Assembly: GCA_000388065.2 (NCBI GenBank)
Contig: KB932217.1
DNA length: 11,606 nt
Reading direction: 5' to 3' (one strand)
From: Fonticula alba ATCC 38817
Lineage: Eukaryota; Protista; Nucleariida
Position numbers and translations under genes: made by a program. Of this stretch, positions 99 to 7,986 are shown one piece after another. The notes under the pieces were generated by a model. The model made no database searches and was not told the DNA's origin. It worked only from the letters and a program-made list of their open reading frames with translations. Every line of letters begins with the position of its first letter. Within the stretch, counting starts at the first letter, position 1.

Positions 99-805
99 CC
101 CTGCTCACGCGAGCCCTCTGGCCCCGGCTGGACATGCATGCACGCGGCGGGGTGCTGGACATGTGCGCCGAGGCCCAGCGCACCGGGCTGGACTACCGGG
201 CCCGCAAGTCGGACACCTGCCAAAATAGCACCACCTGCCTGGAGGACTGCGCGGTGTACACCTACCTGGAGGCGGTGTGCGACCGCGGCACGGACCAATG
301 CTTCCTGGAGATGGCGGCCGTGCACACGCGCTGTCCCCCGGGCACCGGGGCCCGGGATCTGATGGACTCGGTGTCCTACGATTGCCAGGCCACGGTGGTG
401 GTGCCGGATGAGTGGGACTCCGGCAGCGGCAGCGCCCTGCCCCCGGGGCCGCACCCCCGGCCGACCGATCCCCAGCCGAACCGCCTCTGCCCCGAGGGGA
501 CCCCCACCACCGAGGAGGACCTGCTGCGGTTCTGCACCTCGGCCGAGGACGACTGCTCCAAAATCTGCGCCTCCGTCAAGAGCGACTACCACTATTGCAC
601 CGAGCCGACGCTGGCCCGGTGCCAGGAGCGCATGCTCCACTACATCGACCGGTGCCAGGAGGCCAGCCCCGACTCGTATGCCACCAGCATGAAGGACTTC
701 TGCAATGGGGCCGGCGGGCCTGGCGGCCTGGCCGCCGGCCGGCCGGCTCTCCTGCTGGGCCTCCTGGCCAGCGCCCTTGCGATGGGGCTGCTGCTGGTCG
801 GGTGA
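99..805 (+). CDS. Terminal exon of a Cys-rich, probably GPI-anchored cell-surface protein with two 8-Cys modules (5' exon probably upstream of the window)
   Basis: ORF 134..805 is strongly GC3-biased and has 16 Cys in two blocks of 8 with matching spacing, separated by a Ser/Gly/Pro linker. It has an NST sequon and ends in a small-residue site (CNG-AGG), a spacer and a 19-aa hydrophobic tail (ALLLGLLASALAMGLLLVG) with no cytosolic tail. No signal peptide follows M134, consistent with an upstream exon. Confidence 0.8.
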
Positions 806-1406: not shown

Positions 1407-1470
1407 CACACACACACACGCACACGCACACGCACACACGCACACACGCACACACGCACACACGCACACG
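1407..1470 (+). repeat. (CA)n/(CACACG)n microsatellite immediately 5' of the paralog A start codon
   Basis: cacacacacacacgcacacgcacacg... runs up to 1 nt before the ATG at 1472. Confidence 0.9.
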
Positions 1471-2626
1471 GATGCTCACCGCGTGTGGTCGCGCCGCAGT
1501 GGCCGGCGTCCGAGCCGGCCGCCTCGCCCGGATAGCCACCCCCCCGGGCGTCCGGTGGGCATGTAGCGGCCCGGGCCGGGCCTCGGTGGCCTCGATGGCC
1601 TCGGTGCCGGCCCACCGCGGGGAGTCGCTGGTGCAGGACATCCAGGCCGGCCGGGCGCCCCTGCCCCGGGGGTTTGACAGTGCCCGGGACTTCTGGGTGT
1701 TCTTGCGCCTGGCCGGGCTGTCGCATCCCAGCCTGCCGGCCAACCATGTGGCCCGGCTGCTGGGGCTGGACCGGGCCTCGACCGAGGTGCTGCTGTCGCG
1801 GTATGCCCATGACTTCGGCATCCCGGCCCCGCGGTCGCTGGTCCTGGAGCAGATCGGCCAGGAGCATGTGGACGACCTGCTGGGGCTGTTCCGGCGGGAT
1901 CCGCCGGTGGTCGGGCAGACGCTGGCCCGGCTGACGGGCCTGACGCCGGGGGCGGCCGACGACCTGCTGAAGCGGCACCTGGCCCCGGACGAGTACCGGC
2001 AGCTGCCGGGGCTGGAGATGGCCGTGTCGCTGGCCCGGCTCCGGGAGCTGCTGACCGTGGCGCCGACCCTGCCCCTGGAGCAGATGGCCCTGCTGCTGAG
2101 CGCCTCCTGGCAGGCGGTCTCCCGGGCCATTGGCCAAAGCCTGCCGCAGTATCAGAAGCTGCTGCCGAGGCACATCGGCGAGCAGCAGATCGCCCGGCTG
2201 CAGGAGATCCTGGCCCGGCCCGGGGAGCCGCCCTCCCCGGAGGCCATCATGCAGTATGCCAAGATCAGCTCCACGCAGCTGCAGCATGTGGGCCCGCATG
2301 TGGACCCGGGGTTTGTGATCCGCGCGCGGGGTCCCCTGTCGGAGCATGCGTAGGCCATCCTCCACGAGCAGGTGGCCGCCCGGCGCACCGTGGCCAGCCT
2401 GGCCTCCATGACGGGCATCGATGGCGCCGACATCCGGTGGTACCTGCGGTACTACTCGCCGACGACCCTGGTCCCGGAGTCCAACTGGACCCCGCTGGGC
2501 GAGGCCCCGGCGGAGCTGCAGTATGGCCGGCTGACCCTGCACCAGTATCTGACGCAGCGCCTGCCGGAGGGGTCGCCCGTGGCCGCCCTGGCCCGGGCGG
2601 CCATCTTGCCCGTGGGTGACAAGGGC

Positions 2627-2898
2627 CCGGCCCCGGCAAGAGTAATGGCATCGGCGCCGGCAACAGTAATGGCATCGGCATCGGCGCCGGCATCGGCATC
2701 GGCCCCGGCCCCGGCATCGGCCCCGGCATCGGCCCCGGCATCGGCCCCGGCATCGGCCCCGGCATCGGCATCAGCATCAACATTAGCGCCGGCATCAGCA
2801 TCAACATTAGCGCCGGCACCGGCATCAACATTAGCGCCGGCACCGGCATCAACATTAGCGCCGGCACCGGCATCAACATTAGCGCCGGCACCGGCATC
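2627..2898 (+). repeat. Coding minisatellite: 12-bp (ASAP) and 24-bp (STLAPAPA) tandem units in the paralog A linker
   Basis: Five 24-nt units RGCATCAACATTAGCGCCGGCAYC at 2773-2892, preceded by CCGGCATCGGCC-type 12-mers. The array is absent from paralog B. Confidence 0.9.
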
Positions 2899-3090
2899 GG
2901 GTCCGGTCACTTCCGTCACCTGGCCACTGGGTGTCGTGCTGCTTGGCCTCCGGCCGATGCCGACACCCACCGAGGTGGCCGCACATGTCGGGGGCCTGCC
3001 GCGGGATATCTCGTCCTTGCGGCTCCAATGGCCGGAGATATACCATCCGAAGTCACGCTCGGCACTCTCGCTGTCGAATGACGAGATTCG

Positions 3091-3434
3091 GGCCCTCCGG
3101 CGCCTGGGCGGCGAGGTCCACCCGGCCGGCGGGCGCATGCGCCACACGGTCCGGGAGATTGCCCGGGCGATGGACCTGCCGCCGGATCGCACGTACTGCC
3201 TCCTGCACCGGTACTGCCCGGAGTACTTCTTCCTGGCGCTGCCGGCGGAGGCCGGGTCCGGGCCCGGGGGGATGTACGTGCCGGAGGGCAAGCTGGGCGA
3301 GCTGGTGTCGGCGGTGATCGGCCGGCACCCGGCGCCGATCCTGCACCAGGTGGCGGCGGATCTGGGGTGTGCCCTGCCGCAGGTGGTGAACTCCCTGCGG
3401 GCGCATGCCAGCCAAGCCGGGCTGCCCTTCAAGG
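3091..3434 (+). repeat. Near-identical segment shared with 5606-5949 (offset 2515)
   Basis: 3091-3414 vs 5606-5929 differ at only 3 positions (3110/5625, 3326/5841, 3406/5921). A few more mismatches follow to 3434/5949. Confidence 0.95.
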
Positions 3435-3637
3435 TGCCCTTCTTCGCCAAGCACAGCACGTTCCGGCGCTATGAAATCATCCAAGCGCGGAGGAGCTTCC
3501 CGCACGCTACCCTCCAAGAGCTGTCTCAGACTCTGGGCATCACTCGCCAGACCCTCGCCAGGGAGTTGGCCAATGCCGATGCCTAGGCCGAGGCCCGGCG
3601 CCCGGTCTCCACCCGGGCACGAGGCCCAACCCGATAG

Positions 3638-3672
3638 ATACACGCACACGCACACGCACACGCGCGCACACA
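3638..3672 (+). repeat. (CACACG)n microsatellite between the paralogs
   Basis: tacacgcacacgcacacgcacacgcgcgcacaca. Confidence 0.8.
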
Positions 3673-4025
3673 TGCCAGGGAGATGTTGGTGGCCCGCCGC
3701 CCCCGGGAGAGGGGGTGTCCGCTTGACCGCGGAGAGCATCGGGGCCGGGCGCGGGACGGAGGGGGGGGGGGGGGGCAAACGCGCGCGCATGCACGCACGC
3801 GCACGCCCGTGCGTGGGCAGTTGGTGGGCATCAGCGCGCAGGGGACCACCCAGCCGGGTGGGAAAAAGAGGAGCCGGGGCGCCCTTCTCCGGCCGGGCTG
3901 GGGCAGAAATTCTTCTCGGCCCCTCCCCCCCCCCCTCTTTCTTTCTCGCGTCCCCCCCCCCCTCTTTCTTTCTCCTCCCTCTGGCTGTTCTCGCCCCTCA
4001 TCCAACACACCACCATCTTTGAAGC

Positions 4026-6095
4026 ATGCTCTCGCGCGCTCGGCTCGGCCTGGGCATCGGGGCCCGGGCGACGGGCTTGGGTGCCCGGCCGGGGCATTTG
4101 GCCGGGGCTCCGGCCGGCGTCCTCGCAGGTGCCCGGTGCCGGGCCGGCCTGACCGGCGCCGCGACATCACACAGCCCCCCGGCGCCGGGCTCGGCCGAAT
4201 GGCCAGGAAGCCCCTCGCGCGGGGGCGGCCAGCCCGGCGCCAGGGCCGGGCCCGCCCCCACGGCCACCACCCCCTGGTACGTGGGGTCCGTGTCCGCCGG
4301 CGAGCACCTGGTCCAGGCCATCAAGGATGGGAAGACCCCCCTGCCGCAGGGGTTCGACTCGGTGGAGGACTTCCACCTGCTGCTGCGGCTGGCCGGGACG
4401 CCCGGCAGCAACCGGCCGCTGGCCGACGATGGGACCATCGGCCGGCTGCTGGGCATGGACCGGCTGTCGGTGCAGGCCCTGCTGGCCCGCTACGCCGGGG
4501 TGTATGGGATCCCGCCGCCGGCGCGCACGCCGCGGCCGAGGTCCCTCATCCTGAAGGACCTGACGTGGCTGGTCCAGCGGGACCCGCCGGTTTTCGGCCG
4601 GCTGCTGGGCCGGCTGCTGGGCCTGTCGGCCAGCCAGGTGGAGCAGCTGCTGGCGAAGCACCTGCCGGAGGTGGACCCGGCCAGGGCCGAGCATTTGTGC
4701 CTGGCCCGGCTGCGGAAGCTGGTGACCGTGGCCCCGGCGTTGTCGGTTGACCAGCTGGCGCTGCTGCTGTCGTCCTCGCGCGACCGGGTGGCCCTGGCCG
4801 TGCAGCAGCACATGCCGGAGTACGGGAACTTCGTGGTGCCCAAGGTGCCGCCCGGGCGGCTGGCGGCCCTGCGAAGGGCGCTGGCCGACCCGGCGGAGCC
4901 GCCCCTCTCGCACGTGGAGATATGTGCCCGGGTCGGCATCAGCAAAAGCACCATGGATCTCCATGGCCCGGAGCTGCATTCGGAGTATGTGATCCGGCAG
5001 TATGGCGGCCTGCGGCCGGAGCAGCTGCGCCTGCTGGTGGACCTGCTGCTGGAGCGCCAGTGGAGCATCGCCGACATGGGCGTCGAGCTGGGCATGCCGG
5101 CGAACCGGCTCCGGTGGTACATCAAGCACTACTACCCGAAGGTGGTGCTGCCGCTGCGGAATTGCCAGCCCGTGTGGCAGCTGGCCCCGCCGGAGGACTT
5201 CGGCCAGCTGACCCTGGCCGAGTATACTCGGCGCTTTTTGCCGGCCGAGTCGCCGGTGCACCAGGCCCCGGACGATGAGACCCTGGCCCGGCTGGGCACC
5301 ACCTTGGCCACCAGCAGGGACTGTGACCCTGCCTCCGTCAGCAACATGGTCCCCTCGTTCGACCCGGATGCGCATGCGACCGCCCCGGGTGGGGACTTGC
5401 GCCTGCTGGCCCCGAACTTTGATCGGGGCTTCCGGCAGCGGCTCCGGGCCCTGGTGGGCCTTCGGCCGCCGCTGGCCGACACCGAAATGTCCACCCAGCT
5501 GGGCGTGCCGGTTGCGGTCATCGTTCGGCACATAGTCACCCCGGAGTTGGGCCAGCTGGAGCATGATTACCATACGGCGCTGGCCCTGGGGACGGAGGAA
5601 ATTCTGGCCCTCCGGCGCCTGGGCAGCGAGGTCCACCCGGCCGGCGGGCGCATGCGCCACACGGTCCGGGAGATTGCCCGGGCGATGGACCTGCCGCCGG
5701 ATCGCACGTACTGCCTCCTGCACCGGTACTGCCCGGAGTACTTCTTCCTGGCGCTGCCGGCGGAGGCCGGGTCCGGGCCCGGGGGGATGTACGTGCCGGA
5801 GGGCAAGCTGGGCGAGCTGGTGTCGGCGGTGATCGGCCGGTACCCGGCGCCGATCCTGCACCAGGTGGCGGCGGATCTGGGGTGTGCCCTGCCGCAGGTG
5901 GTGAACTCCCTGCGGGCGCACGCCAGCCAGACTCGGCTGCCCTTCAAGGCGCCTTCCTATGGGCGACACCCGTGTGCGCGTGTTTTCGAACTCGAGCAAA
6001 TCAAGAAAGAGAAGCCCGACATCTCTCCTAGCGCCATCTGCCTGCTGGCCAACATCAACTCAAAGCAACTGATTGAATGCCGGCCCTTCCTATAG
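4026..6095 (+). CDS. Multi-HTH array protein, paralog B (689 aa), with a putative mitochondrial presequence
   Basis: Uninterrupted ATG..TAG ORF with strong GC3 bias. About 9 HTH-like motifs, e.g. TIGRLLGMDRLSVQALLARY, SHVEICARVGISKSTM, SIADMGVELGMPANRLRWY, TVREIARAMDLPPDRTYCLLHRY. The N-terminus MLSRARL... has no acidic residue until E58. Colinear homology to 1472-3586. Confidence 0.88.
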   Translation: MLSRARLGLGIGARATGLGARPGHLAGAPAGVLAGARCRAGLTGAATSHSPPAPGSAEWPGSPSRGGGQPGARAGPAPTATTPWYVGSVSAGEHLVQAIKDGKTPLPQGFDSVEDFHLLLRLAGTPGSNRPLADDGTIGRLLGMDRLSVQALLARYAGVYGIPPPARTPRPRSLILKDLTWLVQRDPPVFGRLLGRLLGLSASQVEQLLAKHLPEVDPARAEHLCLARLRKLVTVAPALSVDQLALLLSSSRDRVALAVQQHMPEYGNFVVPKVPPGRLAALRRALADPAEPPLSHVEICARVGISKSTMDLHGPELHSEYVIRQYGGLRPEQLRLLVDLLLERQWSIADMGVELGMPANRLRWYIKHYYPKVVLPLRNCQPVWQLAPPEDFGQLTLAEYTRRFLPAESPVHQAPDDETLARLGTTLATSRDCDPASVSNMVPSFDPDAHATAPGGDLRLLAPNFDRGFRQRLRALVGLRPPLADTEMSTQLGVPVAVIVRHIVTPELGQLEHDYHTALALGTEEILALRRLGSEVHPAGGRMRHTVREIARAMDLPPDRTYCLLHRYCPEYFFLALPAEAGSGPGGMYVPEGKLGELVSAVIGRYPAPILHQVAADLGCALPQVVNSLRAHASQTRLPFKAPSYGRHPCARVFELEQIKKEKPDISPSAICLLANINSKQLIECRPFL
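5606..5949 (+). repeat. Second copy of the near-identical segment (partner 3091-3434)
   Basis: Direct base-by-base comparison, offset 2515. Confidence 0.95.
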
Positions 6096-6120: not shown

Positions 6121-6243
6121 AGCATGTGTGCCTGTGAAGCCATGTTTCTGTGAAGCCATGTTTCTGTGTGCATGTCTATGTGTGTATGTGTGTGTGTGTG
6201 TGTCCGTGCTCTTGTGGTGCCGTGTTTGTATGTGTGCGTGTAT
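6121..6243 (+). repeat. (TG)n-rich tract 3' of paralog B, including a perfect 16-bp tandem duplication
   Basis: CTGTGAAGCCATGTTT x2 at 6132-6163, followed by gtgtgtatgtgtgtgtgtgtg. Confidence 0.85.
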
Positions 6244-6522: not shown

Positions 6523-6724
6523 ATGCCAACGGACCTGTTCACGATCAACAACACCGACGCCCCCTCGCCGGAGAGGCGCACGCGCAGCCGGGCCTTCGAG
6601 CTGAGCGGCAACTGCGCGGTCNNNNNNNNNNNNNNNNNNNNNNNNNNNNNNNNNNNNNNNNNNNNNNNNNNNNNNNNNNNNNGGTTTTCCCAGGCCCTCC
6701 AGGGGCCGATGCGGGCGTGCTTCC
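6523..6724 (+). CDS. Possible coding exon of an unidentified gene spanning the assembly gap (strand uncertain)
   Basis: After a poly-C tract, CCCGCAG|ATG opens MPTDLFTINNTDAPSPERRTRSRAFELSGNCAV...FSQALQGPMRACF with near-100% GC3, ending at a possible GTAGGC donor at 6725. The minus frame sharing the same third positions (TAQLPLSSKARLRVRLSGEGASVLLIVN) is also open and has its own possible splice sites. Confidence 0.35.
6622..6682. other. Assembly gap (61 N)
   Basis: Run of N. True length unknown. Confidence 0.99.
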
Positions 6725-7745: not shown

Positions 7746-7757
7746 GGAGAACAGAGA

Positions 7758-7830
7758 AGCCCACTGTGGGGCTCGAACCCACGACCCTGGGATTAAGAGT
7801 CCCATGCTCTACCAACTGAGCTAAACAGGC
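7758..7830 (-). tRNA. trnK-CUU: tRNA-Lys, anticodon CUU, intronless, 73 nt
   Basis: The reverse complement folds as a cloverleaf: GCCTGTT TA GCTC AGTTGGTA GAGC A TGGGA CT-CTT-AA TCCCA GGGTC GTGGG TTCGAGC CCCAC AGTGGGC T. Typical eukaryotic A and B boxes. Confidence 0.97.
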
Positions 7831-7986
7831 TTGTCTGAGCAGATCGGTGTGCGTGCGACATAAGAACGAGGGGCATTTTGCGGGCCGGCGATCGGGCCGC
7901 GGCCGGTGCCGGCGCCCCAGGACGTGTGCCGGCGCCGGCCGGGGTCCGACGAGCGGGGACACCCCGAATGGAGGCCGCGAAATGCA

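What the first reader, a model, noticed from the sequence alone, without database searches (positions are those of the whole stretch)
1472..6095. Tandem pair of ~9-module helix-turn-helix array proteins with mitochondrial-type presequences
Seen: each paralog is a string of about 9 similar modules, an amphipathic helix followed by [ST]xx[EQ][IVLM]Axx[LMT]G[LIVM]xxxx[VL]xxx[LI]x[RK][YH]. Paralog A examples: VARLLGLDRASTEVLLSRY, LARLTGLTPGAADDLLKRH, TVREIARAMDLPPDRTYCLLHRY, ATLQELSQTLGITRQTLAREL. No catalytic domain is evident. Both N-termini are Arg/Ala-rich and acid-free for 50-57 aa (7 and 6 Arg; B starts MLSR). Established: this pattern matches tri-helical bacterial/transposase-type HTHs (IS30 N-terminal HTH, sigma70 region 4-like, BirA-type), and acid-free Arg-rich N-termini typify mitochondrial presequences. 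Known organellar nucleic-acid-binding repeat families (PPR, OPR, mTERF) are not HTH arrays. Inference: a lineage-specific, nucleus-encoded family of modular mitochondrial DNA-binding proteins, acting in nucleoid packaging or transcription control, that I cannot match to a named family. Caveat: GC-rich ORFs are Arg/Ala/Gly-rich by default.
Basis: partly seen in the sequence, partly recalled or inferred. Interest (0 to 1): 0.85.

Follow-up and report, generated by a model that had tools for sequence, protein, structure and literature searches.

The report
Mitochondria-addressed helix-turn-helix array proteins
Two neighbouring intronless genes of the amoeba Fonticula alba encode ~700-residue proteins built from nine helix-turn-helix modules behind a mitochondrial-type address tag; they belong to a family of about 20 genes found only in this species, possibly a new kind of organelle nucleic-acid-binding repeat protein, though location and function are untested.

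Summary
The window is Fonticula alba. Paralog B (4026-6095, 689 aa) is intact. DNA contigs of two runs and RNA contigs of one all read C there (CAG), so A is most likely one 704-aa gene that the reference splits into two models.

The AlphaFold model of B shows nine helix / 8-residue helix / 3-residue turn / helix modules behind a disordered leader. An HMM built only from a different F. alba array protein finds seven of them (59 bits; best of 300 shuffles 7.6). All Pfam hits and nearly all structural neighbours are HTH DNA-binding domains. No mTERF, PPR or solenoid match appeared.

Every strong relative (about 20 loci) is from F. alba. The leaders are unalignable but Arg-rich and acid-free, and seven paralogs keep an R-x-[FLI]-S-S site typical of mitochondrial processing. 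B's ATG follows an in-frame stop and no later Met precedes the conserved domain.

Mitochondrial import is likely but unproven. DNA versus RNA binding and the cellular role are inference only. First-stage readers noted the same kind of protein on other DNA of this genome.

The parts
1472..3586 (+). Paralog A: one ORF of 704 codons if the TAG at 2351-2353 is read as CAG. The public annotation splits it into 252-aa and 369-aa models.
1472..1618 (+). Paralog A leader, 49 aa: 7 Arg, no acidic residue. A second Met at residue 42 (window 1595) is the annotated start.
2351..2353 (+). In-frame TAG in the window, inside helix 1 of module 5. Contigs of two DNA runs and one RNA run read C at 2351 (CAG, Gln), so this is probably an assembly base error.
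1676..2461 (+). Paralog A modules M1-M5: 1676-1822, 1841-1984, 2024-2164, 2174-2332, 2336-2461
2599..2910 (+). Pro/Ala/Ser-rich low-complexity insertion in A's variable linker (12-24-nt repeats). Its length differs in run X2: 72-nt deletion, 6-nt insertion.
2912..3583 (+). Paralog A modules M6-M9: 2912-3067, 3071-3235, 3278-3421, 3449-3583
   Evidence: Pfam HTH_23 on M9, E 8e-7
3080..3438 (+). Gene-conversion tract, copy in A (modules 7-8): 96.9% identical to B 5595-5953, against about 65% elsewhere
4026..6095 (+). Paralog B: intact 689-aa ORF (P0001), covered contiguously by RNA contigs without splice joints
4026..4286 (+). Paralog B leader: 8 Arg in 91 aa, first acidic residue at 58, residues 1-82 predicted disordered. 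TGA at 4020-4022 closes the frame upstream. An RNA contig spans 3953-4189.
4356..5138 (+). Paralog B modules M1-M5 (4356-4511, 4533-4667, 4695-4835, 4845-5006, 5010-5138); pLDDT mostly 80-94
5139..5423 (+). Conserved linker (L-T-L-x-E-Y-T-R-R-F-L-P-x-x-S-P-V-H) followed by a variable, disordered hinge
5424..6086 (+). Paralog B modules M6-M9 (5424-5582, 5586-5750, 5793-5936, 5964-6086). M7-M8 and the loop between them are the family's most conserved block.
5595..5953 (+). Gene-conversion tract, copy in B

Best explanation
A and B are two members of a family of about 20 intronless nuclear genes, found only in Fonticula alba. Each encodes a basic protein (pI 8.5-10) of roughly 620-800 residues.

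Architecture: a cleavable mitochondrial matrix presequence, then five HTH modules, a conserved linker and a variable hinge, then four more HTH modules.

Shown here: the module architecture, the restriction of the family to this species, transcription, and presequence-like leaders with an MPP/Icp55-type R-x-[FLI]-S-S site in seven paralogs.

Inferred: after import the array binds mitochondrial nucleic acid. I consider double-stranded DNA somewhat more likely than RNA, because every sequence and fold neighbour is a DNA-binding HTH. The nearly invariant modules 7-8 would contact a common element or partner; their recognition helix keeps Q, N and S in all paralogs. The variable modules 4, 6 and 9 would give each paralog its own target. 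On this reading the family would be this lineage's counterpart of the PPR, OPR, HPR and mTERF families, which control organelle genome expression or maintenance gene by gene.
For: Architecture:
- Nine tri-helical modules in the model of B; residues 90-410 at pLDDT 80-94. The C-terminal piece remodelled alone gives pLDDT 83, pTM 0.70.
- An independent module HMM scores 59 bits on B, against a maximum of 7.6 in 300 shuffles.
- All Pfam hits across 13 paralogs are HTH-clan families, and they fall on different modules.

Neighbours:
- AlphaFold DB neighbours beyond the family are multi-HTH proteins, E 1e-5 to 1e-2.
- Most of the 50 best chains in the wide PDB search are HTH or winged-helix domains laid on single modules, rmsd mostly 2-3 A.
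- All ten Atlas feature hits are HTH clusters.

Family: all hits with E below 1e-20 are F. alba, and none was found in JGI metagenome contigs.

Targeting:
- Leaders are acid-free for 30-64 residues and Arg-rich, and cannot be aligned with each other. RAFSS, RGFSS, RGLSS or RPISS lies just before the mature domain.
- B's ATG has an in-frame TGA two codons upstream, and the next Met is residue 144, inside module 1.
- RNA contigs cover B's start codon and leader. For A, RNA depth is recorded in the bin that holds its leader.
- F. alba has the processing peptidase MPP (PMC9291397).

Constant and variable modules: mean column conservation is 0.66 for M7, 0.73 for the M7-M8 loop and 0.63 for M8, against 0.46 for M4, 0.43 for M6 and 0.34 for M9. 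The invariant residues are listed.

Not a transposon: no DDE, rve or TniQ domain was found, and the genome holds only 0.36% repeats (bioRxiv 10.64898/2026.06.24.734286).
Against: - No localisation data exist, and no targeting predictor could be run.
- The window's own A and B have only degenerate versions of the cleavage motif (R-A-S-V, R-A-G-P).
- A could start at Met42, as annotated, and then lack a leader.
- H696_00212, a related 13-unit array, has an NLS-like N-terminus and no presequence, so the module is not specific to mitochondria.
- No nucleic-acid binding was tested.
- pTM of 0.56-0.70 suggests that the modules pack on each other, which could bury the recognition helices.
- The best solved multi-domain neighbour, the tandem winged helices of SelB (E 0.055-0.27), binds RNA.
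- Conservation is not clearly lower in the recognition helices of modules 1-3.
- All structural matches have Z of 6.2 or less, or TM below 0.3, so none is individually significant.
Confidence: 0.5

Rival explanations
1. The proteins are mitochondrial but bind RNA. They would act as gene-specific RNA stabilisers, processing factors or translational activators, or as mitoribosome-associated proteins, like PPR, OPR or HPR proteins and the yeast translational activators.
For: The targeting evidence is the same as for the main reading. Expanded, fast-evolving organelle repeat families are RNA binders in most lineages (established knowledge). The best solved multi-domain neighbour is the tandem winged-helix array of SelB, which binds SECIS RNA.
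Against: Every Pfam, Atlas and single-module structural neighbour is a DNA-binding HTH. The SelB matches are not significant (E 0.055 or higher).
Confidence: 0.22
2. The proteins are nuclear or cytosolic DNA-binding proteins derived from transposase-type or bacterial HTH arrays. The Arg/Ala-rich N-termini would be by-products of 72% G+C, or nuclear or nucleolar signals, not presequences.
For: The modules resemble transposase HTHs (HTH_23, HTH_28, HTH_38). The related array H696_00212 has a K-R-P-R N-terminus. The annotation of A starts at Met42. The best hits outside Fonticula are bacterial TniQ-plus-HTH arrays.
Against: Acidic residues are absent from the leaders but make up about 10% of the mature parts under the same G+C. 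R-x-[FLI]-S-S persists at the leader/domain border in otherwise unalignable leaders. B cannot start downstream of its leader without losing conserved sequence.
Confidence: 0.15
3. The array is a protein scaffold inside mitochondria. The HTH modules would serve as packing units for protein-protein contacts, for example with the mitochondrial RNA polymerase or the ribosome, and would not read nucleic acid.
For: pTM of 0.56-0.70 implies defined packing between modules. Modules 7-8 and their G-S-G-P-G-G-M-Y-V-P-E loop are nearly invariant, as expected for a shared partner.
Against: The mature parts are basic, pI 8.5-10. Recognition-helix residues typical of base contacts (Q, N, S, R) are conserved.
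Confidence: 0.1

Closest known systems
Transposase-type and paired-like HTH domains (Pfam HTH_23, HTH_28, HTH_38; the bipartite DNA-binding domains of IS630/Tc1-mariner and IS30 transposases)
   Same: The single module has the same tri-helical HTH with a G-x-S/D turn and an aromatic or His residue at the end of helix 3. HTH_23 scores just above its gathering cut-off on B module 7 and A module 9. The bipartite Tc3 domain and IstA align to modules 6-7.
   Different: There are nine modules instead of one or two. No DDE/rve catalytic domain and no terminal repeats are present, the paralogs are only 30-50% identical, and the genome is poor in transposons.
Bacterial TniQ/TnsD-family target selectors with tandem HTH repeats (P0024, P0025) and other bacterial HTH arrays (P0023, P0027)
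   Same: They have long arrays (9-10 units, period about 50-57 aa) with the same layout: a helix, a Pro-rich loop, then the HTH. Helix 3 is followed by an H-x-P-E-like motif. Among hits outside Fonticula they rank just behind one jellyfish protein (E 1e-10 to 1e-6, 5-7 stretches each).
   Different: The Fonticula proteins have no TniQ zinc-finger domain. Their modules have diverged from one another, whereas the bacterial units are near-identical. They carry a eukaryotic presequence. The similarity score is a sum over weak module hits, so specific ancestry is not shown.
Organelle-targeted helical-repeat families (PPR, OPR, HPR, mTERF)
   Same: All are nucleus-encoded, carry a presequence, are expanded in particular lineages, and are modular arrays without a catalytic domain. 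Genes sit side by side and show gene conversion, as in Rf-like PPR clusters.
   Different: The unit here is a three-helix HTH of about 50 aa, not a two- or three-helix solenoid repeat of 30-38 aa. There are no Pfam hits to PPR or mTERF. Binding and function are untested.
Myb/SANT repeat arrays (c-Myb R2R3, Reb1, SNAPc4)
   Same: They are tandem tri-helical units with a period of about 50 aa that track along DNA. c-Myb R2, Reb1 and SNAPc appear among the structural neighbours.
   Different: No Myb Pfam hit was found, and the modules show no regularly spaced Trp triad.
Kinetoplastid mtTF1 (PMC13623095)
   Same: It is a lineage-specific mitochondrial transcription factor with no recognisable domain, predicted to be built of 'helix-turn-helix repeats'.
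   Different: It is a single 37-kDa protein, not an expanded family. No sequence relation was tested, and the paper may mean generic helical repeats.

Membership tests
HTH clan (HTH_23 / HTH_28 type) | A Pfam model scores above its gathering threshold | tested here: met
   B scores 25.5 bits and the C-terminal piece of A 29.1 bits against a cut-off of 24.6. P0012 scores 35.3 and P0005 28.4. The margins are small, and each hit covers one module per protein.
HTH clan (HTH_23 / HTH_28 type) | Tri-helical fold with a short turn between helices 2 and 3 | tested here: met
   The predicted pattern is helix 8-13, loop, helix 7-8, a turn of 3-4 residues, helix 7-15, nine times over. Single modules superpose on FapR, NiaR, ScpB, SETMAR, DosR and c-Myb R2 at rmsd about 2-3 A, Z 5-6.2. 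This rests on predicted models only, and no Z value is significant alone.
HTH clan (HTH_23 / HTH_28 type) | Binding of nucleic acid through helix 3 | not testable with these tools
   No coordinates or complex prediction were available.
Mitochondrial matrix presequence | N-terminus rich in Arg, free of acidic residues, and variable in sequence | tested here: met
   The first acidic residue is at 51 in A and 58 in B. In 14 of the 16 proteins examined it lies between positions 30 and 64 (P0008: 5; P0012: 18). The leaders cannot be aligned with each other.
Mitochondrial matrix presequence | MPP/Icp55 cleavage motif (R-2 / R-3: R-x-[FYL]-[SA]) | tested here: inconclusive
   RAFSS, RGFSS, RGLSS or RPISS is present in seven paralogs. 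A and B have only R-A-S-V and R-A-G-P at the aligned position.
Mitochondrial matrix presequence | The leader is translated (the true start lies upstream of it) | tested here: met
   Met for B: TGA at 4020-4022, the next Met at residue 144, and an RNA contig over 3953-4189. Uncertain for A: Met42 is the annotated start.
Mitochondrial matrix presequence | Import into mitochondria | not testable with these tools
   No predictor or proteome was available.
mTERF / PPR / other alpha-solenoid organelle repeats | Match to the family profile or to a solenoid fold | tested here: not met
   No Pfam hit to mTERF or PPR in 13 proteins. None appears among the 50 best chains of the wide PDB search, nor among the Foldseek hits below E 0.1.
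DNA transposase (IS630/Tc1, IS30) | DDE/rve catalytic domain; near-identical copies | tested here: not met
   Pfam gives only HTH families. Paralogs are 30-52% identical.
TniQ/TnsD target selectors | N-terminal TniQ zinc-finger domain (PF06527) | tested here: not met
   It is present in P0024 and P0025 and absent from all Fonticula members.

The most novel reading that the evidence does not exclude
Fonticula alba independently built an organellar family of sequence-specific nucleic-acid readers from helix-turn-helix modules. Invariant anchor modules (M7-M8) would be combined with paralog-specific modules that set the target. This would be a fifth solution alongside PPR, OPR, HPR and mTERF, possibly seeded by a bacterial tandem-HTH array taken up from prey.
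Probability: 0.3. Interest if true: 0.85.

Novelty: new variant of a known kind. Interest (0 to 1): 0.66.

Why it matters
Organelle genomes are controlled by large nuclear families of modular repeat proteins, and each such family has opened a research field and a source of engineering tools. All known ones are alpha-solenoids. A family built of classical HTH domains and addressed to mitochondria would show a different route to the same end.

It would also give a handle on mitochondrial gene expression in a deep-branching relative of fungi. Arrays of nine HTH units with partly constant and partly variable modules are candidates for a readable recognition code.

Practically, the report corrects a reference error that splits one gene into two annotated models.

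Tried and rejected
- Foldseek against the PDB found nothing below E 0.05, with the whole model or the C-terminal model.
- Foldseek against Swiss-Prot models found nothing meaningful.
- A profile of the C-terminal half against PDB sequences gave a best E of 0.11.
- A scan of JGI metagenome contigs for the two most conserved peptides found no relative.
- Literature searches for the family or for HTH arrays in Fonticula found nothing.
- RNA raw-read run X20 gave almost no reads on the locus; only poly-G artefacts were laid.
- Pfam on six flanking ORFs gave nothing.
- An active-transposon reading was rejected: no catalytic domain, old divergence between copies, and a repeat-poor genome.
- A signal-peptide reading was rejected by eye, because the leaders lack a hydrophobic core.
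- A recent tandem duplication was rejected: A and B are 38% identical outside the conversion tract.

Full report
**Source and gene structure**

The window has about 72% G+C. It comes from Fonticula alba scaffold KB932217.1, around positions 237-249 kb of 355 kb.

Two long ORFs lie head to tail on the + strand. Paralog B is 4026-6095 (689 aa, intact). Paralog A runs from 1472 to 3586 in one frame but is interrupted by TAG at 2351-2353. The stop falls inside a helix that aligns with conserved sequence in B. The public annotation therefore has two models there, of 252 and 369 aa.

Public contigs were laid on the locus. The covering contig in each of three runs reads C at position 2351, where the window has T. 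These are DNA run X1 (depth 177, probably the sample that was assembled), DNA run X2 (a second sample, depth 5) and RNA run X3 (depth 6.5). The codon is therefore CAG, and A is most likely a single 704-codon gene. The stop looks like an assembly base error.

RNA contigs cover both genes contiguously without splice joints. They are absent from the three intergenic bins where DNA depth is present. The genes are thus transcribed and intronless.

**The repeat observation**

AlphaFold2 with an 8-row family alignment gives a mean pLDDT of 68.7 for B. Residues 90-410 score 80-94 and residues 1-82 are disordered.

The secondary structure repeats nine times: a helix of 8-13 residues, a loop, a helix of 7-8, a turn of 3-4 residues, then a helix of 7-15. 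The modules are M1 111-162, M2 170-214, M3 224-270, M4 274-327, M5 329-371, M6 467-519, M7 521-575, M8 590-637 and M9 647-687. A conserved linker and a variable hinge separate M5 from M6. The C-terminal four modules, modelled alone with 11 rows, reach pLDDT 83 and pTM 0.70.

Three tests bear on whether the modules are related by sequence:
- Profile-profile comparison of module sub-alignments links M1 to M7: M5-M7 95.6% (E 1e-8), M1-M2 87.6%, M4-M6 82%, M4-M5 78%. M8 and M9 are not significant.
- As an independent test I built an HMM from ten units of a different F. alba protein, H696_00212 (P0021). It finds M2 to M8 in B for 59 bits in total. Most other full-length paralogs score 18-68 bits (the two short, divergent members P0016 and P0019 score only 3-6), against a maximum of 7.6 bits in 300 shuffled sequences.

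"About nine similar modules" is therefore confirmed. Seven are supported by sequence and two more by predicted architecture.

**What kind of module it is**

Pfam gives only HTH-clan families, and they fall on different modules in different paralogs. HTH_23 scores just above its gathering threshold on B M7 and A M9. HTH_28, HTH_32, HTH_11, HTH_24, Sigma70_r4 and others score below threshold. There is no hit to mTERF, PPR, Myb or any enzyme domain.

The structural searches agree:
- Foldseek against AlphaFold DB clusters finds the paralogs first. It then finds multi-HTH proteins (Mos1 HTH, AsnC, AraC, sigma-70 region 4, CENP-B_N) at E 1e-5 to 1e-2 with low TM.
- In the wide PDB search, most of the 50 best chains are HTH or winged-helix domains, nearly all DNA-binding, laid on single modules at rmsd mostly 2-3 A. 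Examples are FapR, NiaR, ScpB, GcrA, c-Myb R2, IclR, BirA, SETMAR, KorB, VirB, DosR, Tc3 and IstA. Z is 6.2 or less, so no match is significant alone. The uniformity is telling, and no solenoid family appears.
- Foldseek against the PDB and Swiss-Prot finds no significant whole-array match. The best is the tandem winged helices of SelB, E 0.055-0.27.
- The Atlas feature search returns only HTH clusters, at scores that count as leads only.

**The family**

A profile search of 1.84 billion representatives gives 34 hits. Every hit with E below 1e-20 is an F. alba protein named 'hypothetical'. The locus tags are:
- H696_02523 and 03118
- H696_04187 and 04193
- H696_04677 and 04689
- H696_05305 and 05449
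- H696_05857 and 05858
- H696_05862 and 05870
- H696_05959 and 05961
- H696_06112, 06131, 06163 and 06348
- the window's own pair

That makes about 20 loci. Several have close locus-tag numbers, and one other pair is confirmed adjacent on its scaffold. Two clusters lie within about 25 kb of scaffold ends. JGI metagenome contigs hold no relative.

A and B are not recent duplicates. Their N-terminal halves are 38% identical, while B is 52% identical to H696_04677, and the tree is star-like. However, a 359-nt tract over modules 7-8 is 96.9% identical between them (A 3080-3438, B 5595-5953), against about 65% elsewhere. That indicates gene conversion.

It has a K-R-P-R N-terminus and no presequence.

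Outside Fonticula, most of the hits inspected are bacterial tandem-HTH arrays:
- P0024 and P0025 have a TniQ domain followed by 9-10 near-identical units ending in H-F-P-E-L-C.
- P0024 lies next to a second TniQ gene.
- P0023 and P0027 are arrays of transposase-type HTH units.

They share the module layout and an H-x-P-E-like motif after helix 3. Their scores are sums over weak module hits, so ancestry is not established.

**The leaders**

With the same G+C content, the mature parts hold 8-10% Asp+Glu. Leaders free of acid for 50-57 residues are therefore unlikely by composition alone (P about 0.017 for A and 0.002 for B).

Across the family the leaders differ in length (34-98 aa, and 191 aa in one paralog) and cannot be aligned. 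They nevertheless stay Arg-rich and acid-free. Seven paralogs have RAFSS, RGFSS, RGLSS or RPISS just before the conserved domain, and others have near variants. By established knowledge this is the R-3 site cut by MPP and trimmed by Icp55 (Vogtle et al. 2009, cited in PMC9291397). That paper reports MPP in F. alba.

For B, TGA lies two codons upstream of the ATG. No ATG lies between the start of the RNA contig (3953) and 4026. The next Met is residue 144, inside conserved module 1. The leader must therefore be translated.

For A, Met42 lies just before the domain and is the annotated start, so A's leader is less certain. A and B themselves have only degenerate cleavage motifs.

Mitochondrial import is therefore likely (my estimate about 0.7) but unproven.

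**Mechanism (inference)**

The mature proteins are basic, pI 8.5-10. Conservation is highest in M7, the G-S-G-P-G-G-M-Y-V-P-E loop and M8. Helix 3 of M8 keeps Q, N and S in all eleven aligned sequences. M4, M6, M9 and the hinge are variable.

I read this as a constant anchor plus paralog-specific modules. The proteins would act as gene-specific or site-specific factors on the mitochondrial genome or its transcripts. DNA is somewhat favoured because all neighbours are DNA-binding HTHs. RNA binding, as by the tandem winged helices of SelB, and a scaffold role remain open.

The transposon reading is rejected. There is no catalytic domain, the copies diverged long ago, and repeats make up only 0.36% of the genome.

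**Comparison and novelty**

The module belongs to the HTH clan of the transposase or paired-like type. The array has no solved or characterised counterpart. Functionally the nearest concept is the organelle repeat-protein families (PPR, OPR, HPR, mTERF), and clustered genes with gene conversion recall Rf-like PPR clusters. The kinetoplastid mtTF1 is a recent example of a lineage-specific mitochondrial factor described as made of helix-turn-helix repeats (PMC13623095).

I found no paper on this family. First-stage readers of this scan noted similar presequence-plus-HTH-array proteins on other DNA of the same genome, and none of these notes showed a follow-up. I rate the finding as a new variant of a known kind.

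Noticed in passing
window 2351: The reference base T creates a TAG stop. The covering contigs of two DNA runs and one RNA run read C. The public annotation splits the gene into 252-aa and 369-aa models because of it.
   Followed up: yes
window 2599-2910: The Pro/Ala/Ser-rich repeat tract inside paralog A differs in length between samples. Run X2 has a 72-nt deletion (2741-2814) and a 6-nt insertion at 2845.
   Followed up: partly
window 1407-1470, 3641-3672, about 6166-6215; poly-G at 1233-1246 and 3761-3775: A (CA)n/(CACG)n microsatellite and a G-run lie upstream of both paralogs, and a (GT)n-rich tract follows B. Apart from these low-complexity tracts the upstream regions are not alike.
   Followed up: partly
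window 7756-7831 (-): A tRNA-Lys(CTT) gene.
   Followed up: no
window 6622-6682: A run of 61 N (assembly gap) downstream of paralog B.
   Followed up: no
window 134-805 (+): An annotated 223-aa Cys-rich ORF with a hydrophobic C-terminal tail and no Pfam match.
   Followed up: no
It has an NLS-like N-terminus (K-R-P-R) and no presequence, so it is a likely nuclear cousin of the mitochondrial family.
   Followed up: partly
L004 639-3239 (P0024); L005 4314-6119 (P0025): Bacterial proteins with a TniQ domain followed by 9-10 near-identical HTH units ending in H-F-P-E-L-C. P0024 lies next to a second TniQ gene. They may be modular DNA target selectors of Tn7-like elements.
   Followed up: partly
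L001 (KB932214.1 518890-540950 of 542068); L002 (KB932216.1 4322-26283): Other family members lie within about 25 kb of scaffold ends, one of them as another side-by-side pair (H696_05857/05858). This may reflect a subtelomeric location.
   Followed up: no
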